DNA of 64,000 bases from Convolutriloba macropyga. Its lineage: Eukaryota. The translations under genes and the position numbers were made by a program. This document shows, in pieces, positions 33,916 through 44,770 of the stretch. The stretch is from contig NC_134472.1 of assembly GCF_964194025.1 (NCBI RefSeq), positions 62,434,001-62,498,000 of the forward strand, read 5' to 3'. The notes below the pieces were generated by a model. The model was not told where the DNA came from. It made no database searches and saw only the letters and a list, made by a program, of their open reading frames with translations. Positions within the stretch are counted from its first letter, which is position 1. Each line of letters starts with the position of its first letter.

Positions 33916-35116
33916 CTATCACTCTTATATTCGAATTAGTGTTAAGCTCAGTGAAAAAGCAAAAAACTCTTAACGCAACCAAAACAACCTTGATATTAAT
34001 TTAGAGCGACAAATGCTGAAAACTACCTGAAAAGCTGCTTGACTTCCGGTGGCGAAAACAATTTACTCAATTCAAAAAATACCTCCCCAAAACTAACGCT
34101 CACTCGAGAACAGATATATGAACAAATATACCCCTCCAAGCTCGCAATATTCAAGAAGGCAGCTAACTCTACTCTTCTGCGTTTACCTGCTTTCTATATT
34201 CAGAATTAGCTCCTCCTCCAGCCTAAAAGATGCAAGTCTATCGCACCAGCAGCCGCAAATTCTAAACAACCTTACATTGATTTTCCAAAGAACGGCATCC
34301 CAGAGTGTTTCATAATTTAATAAGTTGGTTATAATCACTGAAATTTATATCGATATAGTTTAAAAAATCCAGTGCAAAGATAACATAATTTTAGTGCAGA
34401 CTTTGAATAGACCTATTTTTTTTCTTTATTTTTTACCTAAACGGCAAAACTCCGACAGTGCAGAGCTAAGTTGCATTTCAATTGACGATGCAAAAAAAAT
34501 TACAAACCTACCAATTTTTTATTTGTTATGTTAGTGATCTATTAATTTAGTATTCCACTTCTGTAGAAAAGTAAATTAAGAGCCAAGGATTTGTTGGCGG
34601 TACCGTTTGACAAATGCTGCGGTTTCTATGATGAGGATGTCAACGTACCAGTTGGAGCCTAAACAACTGGGAACCGAATTACAAGAAGAGGCTTGGAAAA
34701 CTCAATTTACTTCATCTCTCCATATTTATATATAGATCTACACGAGCTACTTTTCTTAATCGCTATTCTCTCAGAAAAATACAATGCCAATATTCCGATC
34801 ACTAGAAACCAAAACTGTGATGATCAACCAAATACCAGAGAGTTTGAGCTAATAAACATAAATCAAACAAGAACGAAAAAAGACGATGCAAATTTCTGGA
34901 GGCGTTTTAGTCAACATTTAAACGTTATCTGTAAAATCACAAATTTAGCTAATGAAAGCTTAAACGATTAACCGAAATATACTAGAATTATTTCTCTAGA
35001 CATTACTCTGCAGCCAATTCTTGTACGTGGACCTTTTTGTGCAACTGCAACAACCGCAATCCAGTACAGAACGCCAAATTAGCCAACCAATAAAAGGATG
35101 TCAACCTTAGTGCCAC

Positions 35117-35320
35117 NNNNNNNNNNNNNNNNNNNNNNNNNNNNNNNNNNNNNNNNNNNNNNNNNNNNNNNNNNNNNNNNNNNNNNNNNNNNNNNNNNNN
35201 NNNNNNNNNNNNNNNNNNNNNNNNNNNNNNNNNNNNNNNNNNNNNNNNNNNNNNNNNNNNNNNNNNNNNNNNNNNNNNNNNNNNNNNNNNNNNNNNNNNN
35301 NNNNNNNNNNNNNNNNNNNN
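35117..35320. other. N-run of 204 nt at the RTE 3' end
   Basis: Counted directly. Confidence 0.95.
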
Positions 35321-38300
35321 CAAAAATGAAATAAAGGCACGGTTGGCAACAAATACAAACAAAACAAGAAGAGTTATTTGTTTGGTTATTCTGTGAAGTG
35401 CTGTACGACGAAATTGTTGAAGGCATTCTTTGACCCGGTTGCTGCTTTCTCCTGCAATCTGGTGAACGATACTTTGTTTCGTACACAGTCTCCTTCGATT
35501 TGACTCATCCACGTTTTCCGTTGCCCCCCAGGAGCGCGTCTAGCATGGACGTATTGATCGGGCGGGTCCCAATCGAAGGTACTGCGGGCTAATCTTCCTG
35601 GTTCCATTCTCTGGATGTGTCCGTACCATTTTATCCGTTTGAGCATGATCATCGTGGATAGTTGGGGCATTCGTGATCTTGACATAATTTCTTCGTTCGT
35701 TGCTTTCTCCAGATATGACACACGTAGAATTCTCCGAAGACAACCACAGTGGAAACTCTCAAGGTTTCTCTCCATTAATTTCGAAAGAGTCCAAGTCTCT
35801 GAGCTGTACAGCACGGCTGATAAAACGAGTGCTTTGTACAAATTGCACTTGAGGTGCACGCTGAGCTGCTTGCTCTTCCAGAGATTTTGGAAGTTAGCAA
35901 ACCGTTGTCTACCTTCTGCAAGTTTGCAATTGACTTCCTGCAGGTCTCCATGCTTGAGGCTGACATATGATCCGAGATACTTGAACGCTTCTATGTTTTC
36001 AAACTCGTTTCCGAGAACATCTTTTACTTTGCAGGAAAACACGCGTGTGGCAACTGCTTTAGGTTTGCCACAGTATCTCGATTGGTGAACTTTTCGGCCA
36101 TTGACTGTTTTGAACTTTCTTTCACACTTGTCACAGGTAAGGCTCGCCTCTAGTTGCTCGAACTTTGACTTGTCGACGACATTCTTTGACAAACCGGCTT
36201 TGCAGAATCTTGTTTGGTGCACTTTGCGTCCGGTAACTGTACTGAATTGCCGCTGACAATTCTGACATCTTAAAGACTCTTGGTCAGCCACCACTGACCG
36301 ACTCTCATTTTCTAGCGACTCTGAATCTGCTACCGCAGATTGTTGTTGTGAAGCTACCAACGCTGGCTTAGCCACCGCTAAGCTTTTCAATCTTAGCTTC
36401 CGGCCATCTTGTGTTTCGAACCAGCCCGCTTTCTTTTTCGTTCCCAGCAGCACCTCCGTGCTGATGGTTAGTCGTGACTGGCTAGATGTCTCTGCCAGGA
36501 GTCCTAGTTTGCCTTTATGTGTTCCAGTGAGTATCTCCACGTTCTGTTGGATACTAGGCACTGCAACAACATTTGGGCTGTCGCATTTTACGCCCATATA
36601 TTTTTTTTTTGGCCACATTAATCTTCAGACCAGCGGCTTCCGCAAGGGCTTCGATTCGATGTAGGTTTTCTTGCACTCACTGTCTGAGACCCCCACGAGA
36701 GCAACATCATCAGCAAAATTCAAGTCAGCCACCAATCTCCCAATGTCTAATCCTCCATGCACCGAGTTAGCCAAAATGTAGTTGATGACAAGGCCGAATA
36801 GGATTGGGGACCACACATCACCCTGCCTAACGCCCGTTCTGATATCAGATAAGCGTCCTTTCTCACCTTCGGCTTTGACTCGACATTTGAATCCATCATA
36901 GCTGTTTCTTATGATGTTTATCACTTTTTGCGGAAGACCATAGTGTTTCATTATCTGGTACATCTGCTCACGATCGACAGAATCGAATGCCGCTCGAAAG
37001 ACTATGAAACAAAAGCTAATATCCAATTGAAACGCCATTGATTTCTCTATTATTTGACGCAGGGCAGAGAGTTGATCGGCGCATCCTCTGCTTTTTCTGA
37101 AGCCGCACTGCTCTTCCCTTAAGACGCGATCCACTGAATCTTTGCATCGATTGAGAATAACGGAAGCGAACACTTTGCCTGGTACTGACAATAGAGAGAT
37201 CCCTCGGTGGTTCGAACACTCTGACCTCTTTCCTTTACTCTTGTATACACTTATCTATGATGTCCCAGAGCCACTCGACAATACCCTTGTGTGCTTTCAA
37301 CATCTCACAGGAAATGTTATCGGGTCCACTTGCCTTGCCATTCTTCAACCTGCGGACAGCTTCAAGCACTTCTTCAAATCGAATTGGGCTCAGGTCAATC
37401 GACAAGCTTTCAGCTGCTTCTTCGGGATCCAATCTCGTACTGCAACTGGATGTTGAGGGATTCAGGAGTTGACTAAAATGTTCCGTCCAGCGTTCAAGTC
37501 GTTCCTCTTTCGTCCGTAAGTTGACGCCAGTGCTTGAAACTAATTTGGTCAACTGAGGACTCCAGTTTCGGCAAATCTGCTGTGATGCCCCAAAAACCTC
37601 CTTCAAGTTGCCTCTGTCCGCAAAGCTCTGCACTTCTTGGCCTTTGCGTTCAAGCCATGCCCGTTTGTCTGCACGTAGAGCTTTTCTGACTTCCTTACAG
37701 CAGTTTGTGAACTCTAACAACGCCACCGAGCTGCTGTGTTTCTTCAACTGTAGATCAGCTCGTTTCCGGATAAGTTCCAGAGAATCTGGAGAAATCCAAG
37801 GTTTGTTCACTCGCTTGCCCGGAAGGAGGCATTTCACTGCTGCTTGGTTCAGGGCTTTTCGAAAATTGTCCCAAGACTGCTCTGTATTCTCGTAATCGCC
37901 GCTCTTATCCAGATGTAACTTGACCTCCTGCGTGAATAAGTCACGCGTTGTTTCATCTTGCAGCTTTGCAGAACTGATTCTGGGCGTGAAACATGGCTTT
38001 TTAGACAAAAGTTTCATAGATACTTCCGCAATGACCATTTCATGATCGGTAATTGTGGTTTTCCCTCTTCTGGTCCTCACATTCGTCAGACATCCTCTGT
38101 ATCTCTCTGCAAACAGAATGTGATCCAGCATCTTTTTTCGACAACTCGGATCGGGAGGGTTGTAGGTGTACCGATGCACTTGTCGATGCTAGAACCATGT
38201 ACCACCTACGAGCAATTTGTGTGAAGTGCAAAATGATAACAACTTTTCCGAGTTTTCATTTTCTTCACCCATTCCAAACGGGCCTCTGCAGCTCATGGTG

Positions 38301-38966
38301 TCATTCAACTGGTGTCCAGGCTCTGCATTGAGGTCACCGATGACACAAATACGCTCCCTATGTTCGAAGCTGGAAACTAGGTCTGAAAGTTGACTCCAAA
38401 ACAAATCCTTCTCTTGGAGACTAGCTTCATTCGTAGGTGCGTAGCAGACAACAACAGCTAGATTGGCTCTCCTCCGAGCCGCGAACTTGACGTAGCAAAT
38501 ACGTTCACTTAGAGCCACTTGTTCTACGACGCTGTTTATCAATGACTTCTTTACAGCAACGCCCACTCCTCCTTGTCTCGACTTTACACCAGACAACCAC
38601 GAGTCAGACAGGTAGAGCTTGTGGTCTCCGAGATCAATTTCTTGCTCCTGAAATCTCGTCTCCTGCACTCCCAGAATATCCAACTTGTATTGCGCCAGAT
38701 CCATTTTCAAAGCCTCTAAAGATCCGGCTTGGGTCAGTGTTCTGACGTTTAAAGTTGCAATTCTGAGTTGGTTCCTCGGGAGATTCTTAGCACCCCTTAC
38801 CCGGGACTCGGGGCCATGGTTGAATGTACTCATTGCTTTGGTGTTTGAAGGCTGAGATACGACTAGTTGCGCCACAAACTAGAAGACCAGTGCCTCGTTA
38901 GCTCGACCATGTGAGCGGAGAGCCGCAGCACATGACCTACCCCCAGGGGATACCACGTGGAGGTGA
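35321..38966 (-). mobile_element. RTE-clade non-LTR retrotransposon, copy 1 (APE-RT single ORF, disrupted)
   Basis: APE motifs IATLNVRTL, GVQET, CYAPT, GDLNA, LDH; RT motifs QCGFR, RQGD, FADD, FKYLGS; RTE C-terminus WYGHIQRM...W.P...RR.PGGQRKTW; one nonsense codon, a 53-bp deletion near 37248 and frameshifts. Confidence 0.93.
38892..38966 (-). ncRNA. HDV-like self-cleaving ribozyme at the RTE 5' end (5' strands hidden in the N-run)
   Basis: UC-ACC-UCCACGU-GGU-AUCCCCU-GG-...P4 hairpin...-GCUAAC-GAGGC follows the antigenomic HDV layout (ACC-UCCUCGC-GGU-P1'-GG-P4-GCUAA-P2'). Confidence 0.85.
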
Positions 38967-39188
38967 NNNNNNNNNNNNNNNNNNNNNNNNNNNNNNNNNN
39001 NNNNNNNNNNNNNNNNNNNNNNNNNNNNNNNNNNNNNNNNNNNNNNNNNNNNNNNNNNNNNNNNNNNNNNNNNNNNNNNNNNNNNNNNNNNNNNNNNNNN
39101 NNNNNNNNNNNNNNNNNNNNNNNNNNNNNNNNNNNNNNNNNNNNNNNNNNNNNNNNNNNNNNNNNNNNNNNNNNNNNNNNNNNNNNNN
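38967..39188. other. N-run of 222 nt at an RTE tail-to-head junction
   Basis: Counted directly. Confidence 0.95.
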
Positions 39189-42100
39189 CAAATATGAAAT
39201 AAAGGCACGGTTGGCAACAAATACAAACAAAACAAGAAGAGTCATTTGTTTGGTTATTCTGTGAAGTGCTGTACGACGAAATTGTTGAAGGCATTCTTTG
39301 ACCCGGTTGCTGCTTTCTCCTGCACTGTGTACGATACTTTGTTTCGTACACAGTCTCCTTCGATTTAACTCATCCACGTTTTCCGTTGCCCCCCAGGAGC
39401 GCGTCTAGCATGGACGTATTGATCGGGCGGGTCCCAATCGAAGGCACTGCGGGCTAATCTTCCTGGTTCCATTCTCTGGATGTGTCCGTACCATTTTATC
39501 CGTTTGAGCATGATCATCGTGGATAGTTGGGGCATTCGTGATCTTGACACAATTTCTTCGTTCGTTGCTTTCTCCAGATATGACACACGTAGAATTCTCC
39601 GAAGACAACCACAGTGGAAACTCTCAAGTTTTCTCTCCATTAATTTCGAAAGAGTCCAATTCTCTGAGCTGTACAGCACGGCTGATAAAACGAGTGCTTT
39701 GTACAAATTGCACTTGAGGTGCACGCTGAGCTGCTTGCTCTTCCAGAGATTTTGGAAGTTAGCAAATTGTTGTCTACCTTCTGTAAGTTTGCAATTGACT
39801 TCCTGCAGGTCTCCATGCTTGAGGCTGACATATGATCCGAGATACTTGAATGCTTCTATGTTTTCAAACTCGTTTCCGAGAACATCTTGTACTTTGCAGG
39901 AAAACACGCGTGTGGCAACTGCTTTAGGTTTGCCACAGTATCTCGATTGGTGAACTTTTCGGCCATTGACTGCTTTGAACTTTCTTTCACACTTGTCACA
40001 GGTAAGGCTCGCCTCTAGTTGCTCGAACTTTGACTTGTCGACGACATTCTTTGACAAACCGGCTTTGCAGAATCTTGTTTGGTGCACTTTGCGTCCGGTA
40101 ACTGTACTGAATTGCCGCTGACAATTCTGACATCTTAAAGACTCTTGGTCAGCCACCACTGACCGACTCTCATTTTCTAGCGACTCTGAATCTGCTACCG
40201 CAGATTGTTGTTGTGAAGCTACCAACGCTGGCTTAGCCACCGCTAAGCTTTTCAATCTTAGCTTCCGGCCATCTTGTATTTCGAACCAGCCCGCTTTCTT
40301 TTTCGTTCCCAGCAGCACCTCCGTGCTGATGGTTAGTCGTGACTGGCTAGATGTCTCTGCCAGGAGTCCTAGTTTGCCTTTATGTGTTCCAGTGAGTATC
40401 TCCACGTTCTGTTGGATACTAGGCACTGCAACAACATTTGGGCTGTCGCATTTTACGCCCATATATTTTTTTTTTTGGCCACATTAATCTTCAGACCAGC
40501 GGCTTCCGCAAGGGCTTCGATTCGATGTAGGTTTTCTTGCACTCACTGTCTGAGACCCCCACGAGAGCAACATCATCAGCAAAATTCAAGTCAGCCACCA
40601 ATCTCCCAATGTCTAATCCTCCATGCACCGAGTTAGCCAAAATGTAGTTGATGACAAGGCCGAATAGGATTGGGGACCACACATCACCCTGCCTAATGCC
40701 CGTTCTGACATCAAATAAGCGTCCTTTCTCACCTTCGGCTTTGACTCGACATTTGAATCCATCATAGCTGTTTCTTATGATGTTTATCACTTTTTGCGGA
40801 AGACCATAGTGTTTCATTATCTGGTACATCTGCTCACGATCAACAGAATCGAATGCCGCTCGAAAGTCTATGAAACAAAAGCTAATATCCAATTGAAACT
40901 CCATTGATTTCTCTATTATTTGACGCAGGGCAAAGAGTTGATCGGCGCATCCTCTGCTTTTTCTGAAGCCGCACTGCTCTTCCCTTAAGACGCAATCCAC
41001 TGAATCTTTGCATCGATTGAGAATAATGGAAGCGAACACTTTGCCTGGTACTGACAATAGAGAGATCCCTCGGTGGTTCGAACACTCTGACCTCTTTCCT
41101 TTACTCTTGTATAATGGGACAATTTCTGCTACCTTCCAGTCATCGGGTAGAACTTCCGTCGACCAACACTTATCTATGATGTCCCAGAGCCACTCGACAA
41201 TACCCTTGTGTGCTTTCAATATCTCACAGGAAATGTTATCGGGTCCACTTGCCTTGCCATTCTTCAACCTGCGGACAGCTTCAAGCACTTCTTCAAATCG
41301 AATTGGGCTCAGGTCAATCGACAAGCTTTCAGCTGCTTCTTCGTGATCCAATCTCGTGCTGCAACTGGATGTTGAGGGATTCAGGAGTTGACTAAAATGT
41401 TCCGTCCAGCGTTCAAGTCGTTCCTCTTTCGTCCGTAAGTTGACGCCAGTGCTTGAAACTAATTTGGTCAACTGGGGACTCCAGTTTCGGCAAATCTGCT
41501 GTGATGCCCCAAAAACCTCCTTCAAGTTGCCTCTGTCCGCAAAGCTCTGCACTTCTTGGCCTTTGCGTTCAAGCCATGCCCGTTTTCTGCACGTAGAGCT
41601 TTTCTGACTTCCTTACAGCAGTTTGTGAACTCTAACAACGCCACCGCGCTGCTGTGTTTCTTCAACTGTAGATCAGCTCGTTTCCGGATAAGTTCCAGAG
41701 AATCTGGAGAAATCCAAGGTTTGTTCACTCGCTTGTCCGGAAGGAGGCATTTCACTGCTGCTTGGTTCAGGGCTTTTCGAAAATTGTCCCAAGACTGCTC
41801 TGTATTCTCGAAATCGCCGCTCTTATTAAGATGTAACTTGAACTCCTGCATGAATATGTCACGCGTTGTTTCATCTTGCAGCTTTGCAGAACTGATTCTG
41901 GGCGTGAAACATGGCTTTTTAGACAAAAGTTCCATAGATACTTCCGCAATGACAAGTTCATGATCGGTAATTGTGGTTTTCCCTCTTCTGGTCCTCACAT
42001 TCGTCAGACATCCTCTGTATCTCTCTGCAAACAGAATGTGATCCAGCATCTTTTTTCGACAACTCGGATCGGGAGGTTTGTAGGTGTACCGATGCACTTG

Positions 42101-42882
42101 CCGATGCTGGAACCATGTACCACCTACGAGCAGTTTGTGTGAAGTGCAAAATGATAACAACTTTTCCGAGTTTTCATTTTCTTCACCCATTCCAAACGGG
42201 CCTCTGCAGCTCATGGTGTCATTCAACTGGTGTCCAGGCTCTGCATTGAGGTCACCGATGACACAAATACGCTCCCTATGTTTGAAGCTGGAAACTAGGT
42301 CTGAAAGTTGACTCCAAAACAAATCCTTCTCTTGGAGACTAGCTTCATTCGTAGGTGCGTAGCAGACAACAACAGCTAGATTGGCTCTCCTCCGAGCCGC
42401 GAACTTGACGTAGCAAATACGTTCACTTAGAGCCACTTGTTCTACGACGCTGTTTATCAATGACTTCTTTACAGCAACGCCCACTCCTCCTTGTCTCGAC
42501 TTTACACCAGACAACCACGAGTCAGACAGGTAGAGCTTGTGGTCTCCGAGATCAATTTCTTGCTCCTGCAATCTCGTCTCCTGCACTCCCAGAATATCCA
42601 ACTTGTATTGCGCCAGATCCATTTTCAAAGCCTCTAAAGATCCGGCTTGGGTCAGTGTTCTGACGTTTAAAGTTGCAATTCTGAGTTGGTTCCTCGGGAG
42701 ATTCTTAGCACCCCTTACCCGGGACTCGGGGCCATGGTTGAATGTACTCATTGCTTTGGTGTTTGAAGGCTGAGATACGACTAGCTGCGCCACAAACTAG
42801 AAGACCAGTGCCTCGTTAGCTCGACCATGTGAGCGGAGAGCCGCAGCACATGACCTACCCCCAGGGGACACCACGTGGAGGT
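39189..42882 (-). mobile_element. RTE-clade non-LTR retrotransposon, copy 2
   Basis: About 98% identical to copy 1, lacks the 53-bp deletion, has its own frameshifts and shares the -1 frameshift after FADD. Confidence 0.93.
42810..42882 (-). ncRNA. HDV-like ribozyme, copy 2
   Basis: Same fold as 38892-38966, with P1' GUCCCCU. Confidence 0.85.
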
Positions 42883-43310
42883 NNNNNNNNNNNNNNNNNN
42901 NNNNNNNNNNNNNNNNNNNNNNNNNNNNNNNNNNNNNNNNNNNNNNNNNNNNNNNNNNNNNNNNNNNNNNNNNNNNNNNNNNNNNNNNNNNNNNNNNNNN
43001 NNNNNNNNNNNNNNNNNNNNNNNNNNNNNNNNNNNNNNNNNNNNNNNNNNNNNNNNNNNNNNNNNNNNNNNNNNNNNNNNNNNNNNNNNNNNNNNNNNNN
43101 NNNNNNNNNNNNNNNNNNNNNNNNNNNNNNNNNNNNNNNNNNNNNNNNNNNNNNNNNNNNNNNNNNNNNNNNNNNNNNNNNNNNNNNNNNNNNNNNNNNN
43201 NNNNNNNNNNNNNNNNNNNNNNNNNNNNNNNNNNNNNNNNNNNNNNNNNNNNNNNNNNNNNNNNNNNNNNNNNNNNNNNNNNNNNNNNNNNNNNNNNNNN
43301 NNNNNNNNNN
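42883..43310. other. N-run of 428 nt at an RTE tail-to-head junction
   Basis: Counted directly. Confidence 0.95.
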
Positions 43311-43824
43311 CAAATATGAAATAAAGGCACGGTTGGCAACAAATACAAACAAAACAAGAAGAGTTATTTGTTTGGTTATTCTGTGAAGTGCTGTACGACG
43401 AAATTGTTGAAGGCATTCTTTGACCCGGTTGCTGCTTTCTCCTGCAATCTGGTGAACGATACCTTGTTTCGTACACAGTCTCCTTCGATTTGACTCATCC
43501 ACGTTTTCCGTTGCCCCCCAGGAGCGCGTCTAGAATGGACGTATTGATCGGGCGGGTCCCCCAATCGAAGGCACTGCGGGCTAATCTTCCTGGTTCCATT
43601 CTCTGGATGTGTCCGTACCATTTTATCCGTTTGAGCATGATCATCGTGGATAGTTGGGGCATTCGTGATCTTGACATAATTTCTTCGTTCGTTGCTTTCT
43701 CCAGATATGACACACGTAGAATTCTCCGAAGACAACCACAGTGGAAACTCTCAAGTTTTCTCTCCATTAATTTCGAAAGGGTCACTTAGAGCCACTTATT
43801 CTGCGATGCTGTTTATCAATGACT

Positions 43825-43825
<1 letters not shown>
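43311..43825 (-). mobile_element. RTE copy 3: 3' 470 bp fused to a 44-bp endonuclease fragment
   Basis: 43311-43783 matches the RTE 3' end; 43782-43825 matches the APE region (42423-42466) with 3 mismatches. Confidence 0.88.

Positions 43826-43893
<68 letters not shown>
43825..43893. repeat. (TAC)23 microsatellite
   Basis: Perfect trinucleotide run of 69 bp. Confidence 0.97.
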
Positions 43894-43895
<2 letters not shown>

Positions 43896-44770
43896 TTCTC
43901 CTGTTATTTGCTGCCCCTAGAGCTCATATTTAAACAGTTGCAAATAAACTATCATTTCTATGCGGAAGATACAGTTATTTATTTTGTCTATGAGGAAACG
44001 GTGACTCAGGGGAAGTTTGATCTGATTATTAGCACCTTACAGAAATGATTTTGTGGCGCCAAATTGAAATTGAATATAAGTAAAACAGAGTTTATGAAAG
44101 TAGTGCGAAATAAATCTTTCAACGCAGATCTAAAGCTCCCTTTGGATTCCAAATTTTCGAATCATCCTTGGCTTCATTTTGGAGGAAAAATTTCGTTTTC
44201 AAAGCAAGTCAGCTCGGTTACTTCTGCCTGCTACTATGTGCTGCGGAAGATCTGTACTATCAGAGACACAGTTGACAGTGATGTCCTAATAGGGTTGGTA
44301 TGCGTTACGATTATTTCGCGGCCTGACTACTGCAAATCACTTTATTATGGATTACCTGCTGTACTTCATGGGAAGTTACAACGGATAATGAATTGTGCAT
44401 GCAGGCTGATATTTCGACTGTCACCAGGAACACCAATTTCAAGATTCATCAAGCAGCTACATTGGTTACCTGTTCAGAAACGTGTGCTGTTTAATTTTTT
44501 ACTTTTTGGCCATCGCCTAATTCATCATCCTTAAGGAGTTCCAGGGTATCTTAGCTCTCTTGTGTCTCGCAATGATAAAGTTACAAGATGACATATATTT
44601 ACAACCTTCAAATTTTGGTCACTAAAACTAACTTTGGAAAAACATCTTTCAGCCATGCAATTCCGCATGATTGGAACAGACTGCCATTTGAATTGGAACT
44701 AATACCAGATGGACTTACATACAGGAAGAAAACGAAAACTTTTTTTGATAGTTTTAAATTGCTGCAATTT
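43894..44770 (+). mobile_element. L2/CR1-group LINE RT 3' fragment
   Basis: LLFSCYLLPL...YHFYAEDT, KLNISKTE, SRPDYCKSLYYGLP...KLQRIMN.ACRLI...LHWLPV, FGKTSFS...WNRLP. Confidence 0.85.

What the first reader, a model, noticed from the sequence alone, without database searches (positions are those of the whole stretch)
35117..43310. N-run lengths fit a hidden 204-nt unit (204; 204+18; 2x204+20)
Seen: all three N-runs start at the same base of the RTE 3'UTR (after ...TTTCATWTTTG) and are 204, 222 and 428 nt long. The third gap hides 2 more ribozyme bases than the second, so 428-2-222 = 204, exactly the length of the first gap. The extra 18-20 nt is about the size of the missing P1/J1-2/P2 5' strands. 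Inference: these look like length-preserving masks of a 204-nt unit present once, once and twice, not arbitrary scaffold gaps. The unit could be an element-encoded 3' terminal repeat or a repeated host target such as a small-RNA gene or satellite. Since 204 is divisible by 3, 4 and 6, a microsatellite tail is a live alternative.
Basis: partly seen in the sequence, partly recalled or inferred. Interest (0 to 1): 0.75.

Follow-up and report, generated by a model that had tools for sequence, protein, structure and literature searches.

The report
Masked tails between stacked RTE copies
The three N-runs hide the variable-length simple-repeat tails, plus the first bases of the next copy's ribozyme, between stacked copies of a common jumping gene; there is no good evidence for a hidden 204-base unit, so the finding is ordinary.

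Summary
The arithmetic is right. The N-runs are 204, 222 and 428 long. Each starts at the same base of the RTE 3'UTR. Runs 2 and 3 end 2 nt apart inside the HDV-like ribozyme of the next copy.

The 204-nt unit is not supported. I used lengths only, because the operators barred reading the letters. In 41 unmasked head-to-tail junctions of this family elsewhere in the genome (Convolutriloba macropyga), the distance from the 3' boundary to the ribozyme edge runs from 50 to 1231 nt. It shows no period of 204. It shows a strong period of 3: 27 of 31 junctions up to 500 nt share one phase. Both window junctions (224 and 428) are in that phase.

This fits a variable trinucleotide tail. The only visible microsatellite in the window, (GTA)23, abuts the array's 5' end.

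The N-runs are not the scaffold gaps I would expect from this hifiasm/YaHS assembly. None of 98 other tails checked is followed by N.

Copies A and B are independent insertions.

The scan has already described these (TAG)n-associated RTE arrays elsewhere in this genome. Low interest.

The parts
35117..35320 (.). N-run 1 (204 N). It lies between the 3' boundary of RTE copy A and another repeat family.
   Evidence: The far flank belongs to a family with at least 136 candidate copies.
35321..38966 (-). RTE copy A. Full length apart from the masked first bases, with broken ORFs. The visible ribozyme part is about 38885-38966.
   Evidence: 98.5% identical to B, with a 52-nt deletion. ORF pieces.
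38967..39188 (.). N-run 2 (222 N). It covers the tail of copy B plus about 18 nt of copy A's ribozyme head.
39189..42882 (-). RTE copy B. It has an endonuclease and a reverse transcriptase. The visible ribozyme part is about 42803-42882.
   Evidence: Exo_endo_phos 2.8e-12 and RVT_1 1.7e-21. P3/L3 match to drz-agam-1, 14.5 bits, below threshold. P4 hairpin.
42883..43310 (.). N-run 3 (428 N). It covers the tail of copy C plus about 20 nt of copy B's ribozyme head.
43311..43825 (-). RTE copy C. It is 5'-truncated and internally deleted: 44 nt from the 5' region joined to the last 473 nt.
43825..43894 (-). Perfect (GTA)23 on the element strand, directly abutting the truncated 5' end of copy C. It is the only trinucleotide microsatellite visible in the window.
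   Evidence: (TRF: period 3, 23.3 copies, 100% matches).
34817..35116 (-). Repeat family that starts at the far edge of N-run 1.
   Evidence: 40 scored matches at 85-90%, nearly all starting at query base 1. Pfam finds nothing in its ORF pieces.
43895..44194 (-). 3' end of another repeat family, running right up to the (GTA)23 array.
   Evidence: at least 98 candidates, and most of the 40 scored matches run to within a few bases of the microsatellite (query 298-300).

Best explanation
The region is a head-to-tail pile of three copies of an abundant RTE-type LINE on the minus strand. The order is: (GTA)23, truncated copy C, N428, full copy B, N222, full copy A, N204, another repeat.

Each copy ends in a simple-repeat tail of variable length with a 3-nt period. 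The next copy, which starts with an HDV-like ribozyme, was inserted into that tail by target-primed reverse transcription.

Each N-run replaces one such tail. Runs 2 and 3 also replace the first 18-20 nt of the next ribozyme (the 5' strands of P1 and P2). The runs are masks or withheld stretches inside a contig, most likely with the length kept. They are not scaffold joins.

The values 204, 222 and 428 are then three ordinary tail lengths within the family's range. Their fit to a 204 quantum is a coincidence or a by-product of how the masks were made. It is not a 204-nt unit.

Shown here: the layout of the copies, the family's variable junction lengths and their 3-nt phase, the absence of a 204 period, and that N at this position was not seen in any other copy checked.

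Inferred: the content of the masked stretches, and that their lengths are faithful.
For: Layout.

Family size: 1594 tails and 572 ribozyme heads. Of 60 heads fetched, 19 lie within 1.5 kb downstream of another copy's tail.

Junction lengths in 41 unmasked junctions run from 50 to 1231 with a median of 278. 30 of 41 are congruent to 2 mod 3 (p 2.7e-7). For lengths up to 500, 27 of 31 are (p 9e-10). The Rayleigh test gives p 4e-7 for period 3 and p 0.68 for period 204. Only 2 of 41 lie within 6 nt of 204k+20, against 2.6 expected.

The window's two junctions (224 and 428) are both in the dominant phase. That gives a likelihood ratio of about 5-7 for faithful lengths over arbitrary ones.

(GTA)23 abuts copy C.

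The assembly is hifiasm HiFi plus YaHS (PMC13650328). Pieces of 3.65 kb between N-runs are, to my knowledge, shorter than HiFi contigs can be. The gap sizes other readers reported in this assembly are 23 and 200 N (one of each seen).

None of 98 other tails is followed by N.

RTE-type LINEs are described as ending in 'a 3' polyA or microsatellite tail' (PMC5786205). HDV-like ribozymes at RTE 5' ends are cited in PMC3774820.
Against: I have no mechanism for it.

I could not establish who put the Ns there or why only at this array. Long junctions that keep the 3-nt phase (236-500 nt) elsewhere are not masked, so a general rule of 'mask long simple repeats' does not explain it.

A mask aimed at a simple repeat should not also cover 18-20 nt of ribozyme, unless it is padded.

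The masked letters themselves were not read, by instruction. Their simple-repeat nature is therefore inferred from lengths, from the visible (GTA)23 and from earlier notes.
Confidence: 0.7

Rival explanations
1. The N-run lengths are not faithful. They were estimated or generated by a rule of the assembly, submission or masking pipeline, so no inference about hidden content can be drawn from them.
For: The scan's program labels them gaps of estimated length. The exact fit 204/204/408 is hard to get from three old, independently inserted microsatellite tails. A rule-based origin would explain that.
Against: hifiasm/YaHS assemblies, to my knowledge, use fixed 200-N joins, and the other size reported here is 23. 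Both junction lengths fall in the family's dominant 3-nt phase. Both edges sit at homologous bases in three copies, so the runs replace a defined piece of sequence.
Confidence: 0.17
2. A real, complex unit of about 204 nt lies between the copies once, once and twice. It could be a satellite monomer, a retro-copied small RNA or a higher-order variant of the repeat. It would be masked because of what it is.
For: The exact arithmetic. A complex unit would keep its length over time, whereas a pure 68-unit microsatellite should drift. Content-specific masking would explain why only this array is masked out of 98 tails checked.
Against: 41 other junctions show no 204 period. It needs all three copies to lack the family's usual variable tail, because no repeat letters are visible at either edge. 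It does not explain why the ribozyme's first 18-20 nt are masked too. Two units with no spacer would be odd for a gene.
Confidence: 0.08
3. The tail is copied at a fixed length (68 units) from an RNA whose 3' end is set by the downstream ribozyme's cut. The 408-nt tail would be one normal tail plus one tail-only (extremely 5'-truncated) insertion.
For: It would give 204, 204 and 2x204 in one model. Ribozyme-headed arrays could in principle define RNA 3' ends.
Against: There is no peak at 224 among 41 junctions; the nearest values are 203 and 236. A and B differ by 1.3% and are no closer to each other than to unlinked copies, so they are old enough for pure arrays to have changed length.
Confidence: 0.05

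Closest known systems
RTE-clade non-LTR retrotransposons with microsatellite 3' tails
   Same: An AP-type endonuclease plus a reverse transcriptase. A short 3'UTR is followed by a tail with a 3-nt period. 5'-truncated copies occur (copy C). RTE 3' ends are described as polyA or microsatellite tails (PMC5786205).
   Different: The copies stack head to tail in each other's tails. About a third of full-length heads follow another copy's tail. Earlier notes of this scan say such target choice is undocumented for RTE; I did not test that.
HDV-like ribozymes at the 5' end of non-LTR retrotransposons (R2, R4/Dong, L1Tc, RTE; Anopheles drz-Agam family)
   Same: The position at the element's 5' end. 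The P3/L3 core ACCUCCNCGUGGU matches the drz-agam-1 consensus. There is a long P4 hairpin.
   Different: Only the 3' four-fifths is visible here. The score is far below Rfam's threshold (14.5 against 37 bits) and cleavage is untested.
Microsatellite-targeting LINEs (Kojima and Fujiwara 2004, cited in PMC3774820 and PMC5786205)
   Same: Insertion inside a simple repeat in one orientation and one phase, which builds arrays.
   Different: From my own knowledge, those families belong to clades other than RTE. I did not check this here.
Hi-C scaffold gaps (fixed 200 N from YaHS)
   Same: Runs of N inside a chromosome-scale scaffold. One true 200-N run lies inside a repeat tail elsewhere (L091).
   Different: The lengths are 204, 222 and 428. 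Both edges sit at homologous bases. The pieces between them are only 3.65 kb.

Membership tests
Hidden 204-nt repeat unit (satellite monomer or small-RNA gene) at RTE junctions | Junction lengths fall on 204k plus a constant across copies of the family. | tested here: not met
   41 junctions range from 50 to 1231 nt. Rayleigh p is 0.68 at period 204. 2 of 41 lie within 6 nt of 204k+20, against 2.6 expected.
Hidden 204-nt repeat unit (satellite monomer or small-RNA gene) at RTE junctions | The unit's own sequence is recognisable (self-dot-plot, Rfam). | not testable with these tools
   The letters are N, and the operators barred looking them up.
Microsatellite tail of an RTE-type LINE | Variable length with the period of the repeat unit. 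| tested here: met
   27 of 31 junctions up to 500 nt are congruent to 2 mod 3 (p 9e-10). The window's junctions, 224 and 428, are in the same class.
Microsatellite tail of an RTE-type LINE | The simple repeat is directly visible at the element's ends. | tested here: inconclusive
   Only the (GTA)23 at the 5' side of copy C is visible in the window. The three tails themselves are N.
RTE-clade LINE | An AP endonuclease and a reverse transcriptase in one element. | tested here: met
   Exo_endo_phos 2.8e-12 and RVT_1 1.7e-21 in ORF pieces of copy B. No clade-level phylogeny was done.
HDV-like self-cleaving ribozyme | A nested double pseudoknot (P1, P1.1, P2, P3, P4) with the catalytic C. | tested here: inconclusive
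   The P3/L3 core and P4 are visible. The 5' strands of P1 and P2 are masked. The Rfam score is 14.5 bits against a gathering score of 37.
Ordinary scaffold gap of this assembly | A fixed length, with flanks that are ends of HiFi contigs. | tested here: not met
   The lengths are 204, 222 and 428, against the 200 and 23 seen or reported. The pieces between them are 3.65 kb. The assembly method is given in PMC13650328.

The most novel reading that the evidence does not exclude
The three N-runs really hide a complex unit of about 204 nt, present once, once and twice, that this RTE array carries or targets at this locus only, and that was withheld because of what it is. An example would be a conserved small RNA retro-copied by template switching.
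Probability: 0.08. Interest if true: 0.45.

Novelty: not a real feature. Interest (0 to 1): 0.1.

Why it matters
It matters little. The result shows that arithmetic on N-run lengths does not reveal a hidden element here. The junctions of this LINE family are ordinary tails of variable length and 3-nt period.

One by-product is useful. The fixed 3-nt phase of 87% of short junctions indicates that new copies join the repeat at one phase. That supports sequence-specific insertion into the repeat, a point earlier reports of this scan raised at other loci.

Tried and rejected
Rfam at gathering thresholds found nothing in the whole window.

I rejected a recent tandem duplication of 'copy plus tail' as the cause of equal lengths. 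A-B identity is 98.68%, A is closer to unlinked copies (98.98%), and A and B share only 8 non-majority columns.

I rejected a general 'long simple repeat' mask. Junctions of 236-500 nt that keep the phase are unmasked elsewhere.

- reading or analysing the letters between the 3' boundary and the ribozyme edge in other copies; only distances and N or not-N were printed
- fetching the window's own coordinates from the genome tool
- laying reads across the Ns
- gapped pattern searches that would have printed such letters

One slip: one search printed 30-nt flanks of two other N-runs (L047 and L091). These showed a TAG-type repeat beside them. I did not use this to fill the window's Ns.

Full report
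**Observation**

The window has exactly three N-runs: 35117-35320 (204), 38967-39188 (222) and 42883-43310 (428). Read on the minus strand, each follows the motif ...TTTCAT(A/T)TTTG.

After run 2 the sequence resumes at TCACCTCC. After run 3 it resumes at ACCTCC.

**What the region is**

A self-comparison shows this order on the minus strand:
- a perfect (GTA)23 array, 43825-43894 (TRF)
- copy C, 43311-43825, made of 44 nt from the 5' region joined to the last 473 nt
- N428
- copy B, 39189-42882, full length
- N222
- copy A, 35321-38966, full length, 98.5% identical to B, with a 52-nt deletion
- N204
- a different repeat family

ORF pieces of copy B carry an AP-type endonuclease (Exo_endo_phos, 2.8e-12) and a reverse transcriptase (RVT_1, 1.7e-21). 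All ORFs are broken.

The first visible 80 nt of A and B show the P3/L3 core of an HDV-like ribozyme. The core matches the Rfam drz-agam-1 consensus at ACCUCCNCGUGGUGUC, with 21 model positions cut off on the 5' side. The score is only 14.5 bits (E 1.1), below the threshold of 37. A long P4 hairpin is predicted.

The two sides of runs 2 and 3 belong to different copies. They are not continuous and no frame crosses them.

**The genome**

Its size and scaffold count (1,175,981,408 bases in 4694 scaffolds) match the Convolutriloba macropyga assembly txConMacr16.3. That assembly was built from HiFi reads with hifiasm and scaffolded with YaHS, and has 6645 gaps (PMC13650328).

From my own knowledge, YaHS joins are a fixed 200 N, and HiFi contigs cannot be as short as the 3.65-kb pieces that lie between these runs. 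Other readers of this genome report recurrent 23-N and 200-N gaps, and I met one of each.

So 204, 222 and 428 are not this assembly's usual gaps. With both edges at homologous bases in three copies, the runs replace a defined piece of sequence inside a contig.

**Test of the 204-nt unit, using lengths only**

The operators barred filling the Ns or looking up their letters in other copies. I therefore measured only whether N follows the 3' boundary, and the distance d between two motifs that are visible in the window: the end of the 3'UTR and the ACCTCC edge of the next ribozyme. In the window d is 224 and 428.

- The boundary motif occurs 1594 times in the genome and the ribozyme edge 572 times.
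- None of 98 other tails is followed by N.
- In 41 head-to-tail junctions d runs from 50 to 1231, with a median of 278 (plus the coordinates).
- There is no signal at period 204. Rayleigh p is 0.68, and 2 of 41 junctions lie within 6 nt of 204k+20 against 2.6 expected.
- There is a strong signal at period 3. 30 of 41 junctions are congruent to 2 mod 3 (p 2.7e-7). For d up to 500 the count is 27 of 31 (p 9e-10).
- Both window junctions are in that same phase. This favours faithful N-run lengths over arbitrary ones by about 5-7 to 1.

These are the marks of a variable-length trinucleotide tail, not of a 204-nt unit. The only trinucleotide repeat visible in the window, (GTA)23, abuts the truncated 5' end of copy C. 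That is the expected picture for insertion into such a repeat.

Earlier notes of this scan (s1-200768, s1-217421, s1-224097, s1-217460) state that this family sits in (TAG)n. I did not read those tails myself.

One slip must be declared. One search printed the 30-nt flanks of two unrelated N-runs (L047, L091), which showed a TAG-type repeat. I did not use it to fill the window's Ns.

**The coincidence**

If the hidden ribozyme head is 20 nt, the three tails would be at most 204, then 204, then 408 nt.

I drew lengths from the empirical distribution of the 41 junctions. The exact relation d3-d2 = N1 has p 0.002. Together with N2-N1 lying near 18-20, p is 2e-5. I estimate about 1e-3 after allowing for the relations a reader might have accepted.

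A recent duplication of 'copy plus tail' does not explain it. A and B are 98.68% identical, A is closer to unlinked copies (98.98%), and they share only 8 non-majority columns against 69 and 34 private ones.

Pure arrays of 68 units should also have drifted in length over that divergence. That statement rests on general knowledge of microsatellite instability.

N-run 1 also ends at another repeat family whose matches all start at the run's edge. Its 204 nt may therefore not be tail alone.

I have no mechanism for the fit. I treat it as coincidence or as a by-product of how the masks were made.

**Why only this array is N**

This is unresolved. It is not a general rule for long repeats, because junctions of 236-500 nt that keep the phase are unmasked elsewhere. 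Note s1-224116 reports another array whose ribozyme heads start in gaps. I could not locate it to compare lengths.

**Context**

The sequence upstream of (GTA)23 is the 3' end of yet another repeat family; most of its 40 scored matches run to within a few bases of the microsatellite. So the RTE pile sits in the repeat between two other elements. Pfam did not confirm that the downstream one is Penelope-like.

**Comparison with known systems**

RTE-type LINEs are described as ending in 'a 3' polyA or microsatellite tail' (PMC5786205). HDV-like ribozymes at the 5' ends of R2, R4/Dong, L1 and RTE elements are reviewed in PMC3774820.

The arrangement here is a further example of those known features. 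The scan has already reported it at other loci of this genome.

**Verdict**

The hidden 204-nt unit is most likely not. Interest is low.

Noticed in passing
window 43311-43894: Copy C is 5'-truncated at about element position 417 and internally deleted: 44 nt are joined to the last 473 nt. Its truncated end abuts a perfect (GTA)23 directly.
   Followed up: partly
genome-wide: There are 1594 RTE 3' ends but 572 ribozyme heads, so about 36% of copies are full length. 19 of 60 heads lie within 1.5 kb downstream of another copy's tail. 87% of junctions up to 500 nt share one 3-nt phase, which suggests insertion at a fixed phase of the repeat.
   Followed up: partly
window 34817-35116; G000:C3:53433123-53447351: The repeat family beyond N-run 1 forms tandem arrays of its own, for example three copies spaced about 6.96 kb apart on C3. 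Pfam found nothing in its ORF pieces in the window.
   Followed up: partly
L047 (G000:C2:15154570-15156098) and L091 (G000:C3:40907835-40909363): A 23-N run lies at the start of a repeat tail and a 200-N run lies inside one. Contigs of this assembly evidently break in these repeats.
   Followed up: no
window 37247 (copy A) against 41113-41166 (copy B): Copy A lacks 52 nt that are present in copy B and in most other full-length copies.
   Followed up: no
G000:C1:45610780-45619225: Another array has junction lengths of 762, 564 and 167, with differences of 198 and 397. This is a near-regular spacing that is not exact and not in phase, and it shows how easily such patterns arise.
   Followed up: no
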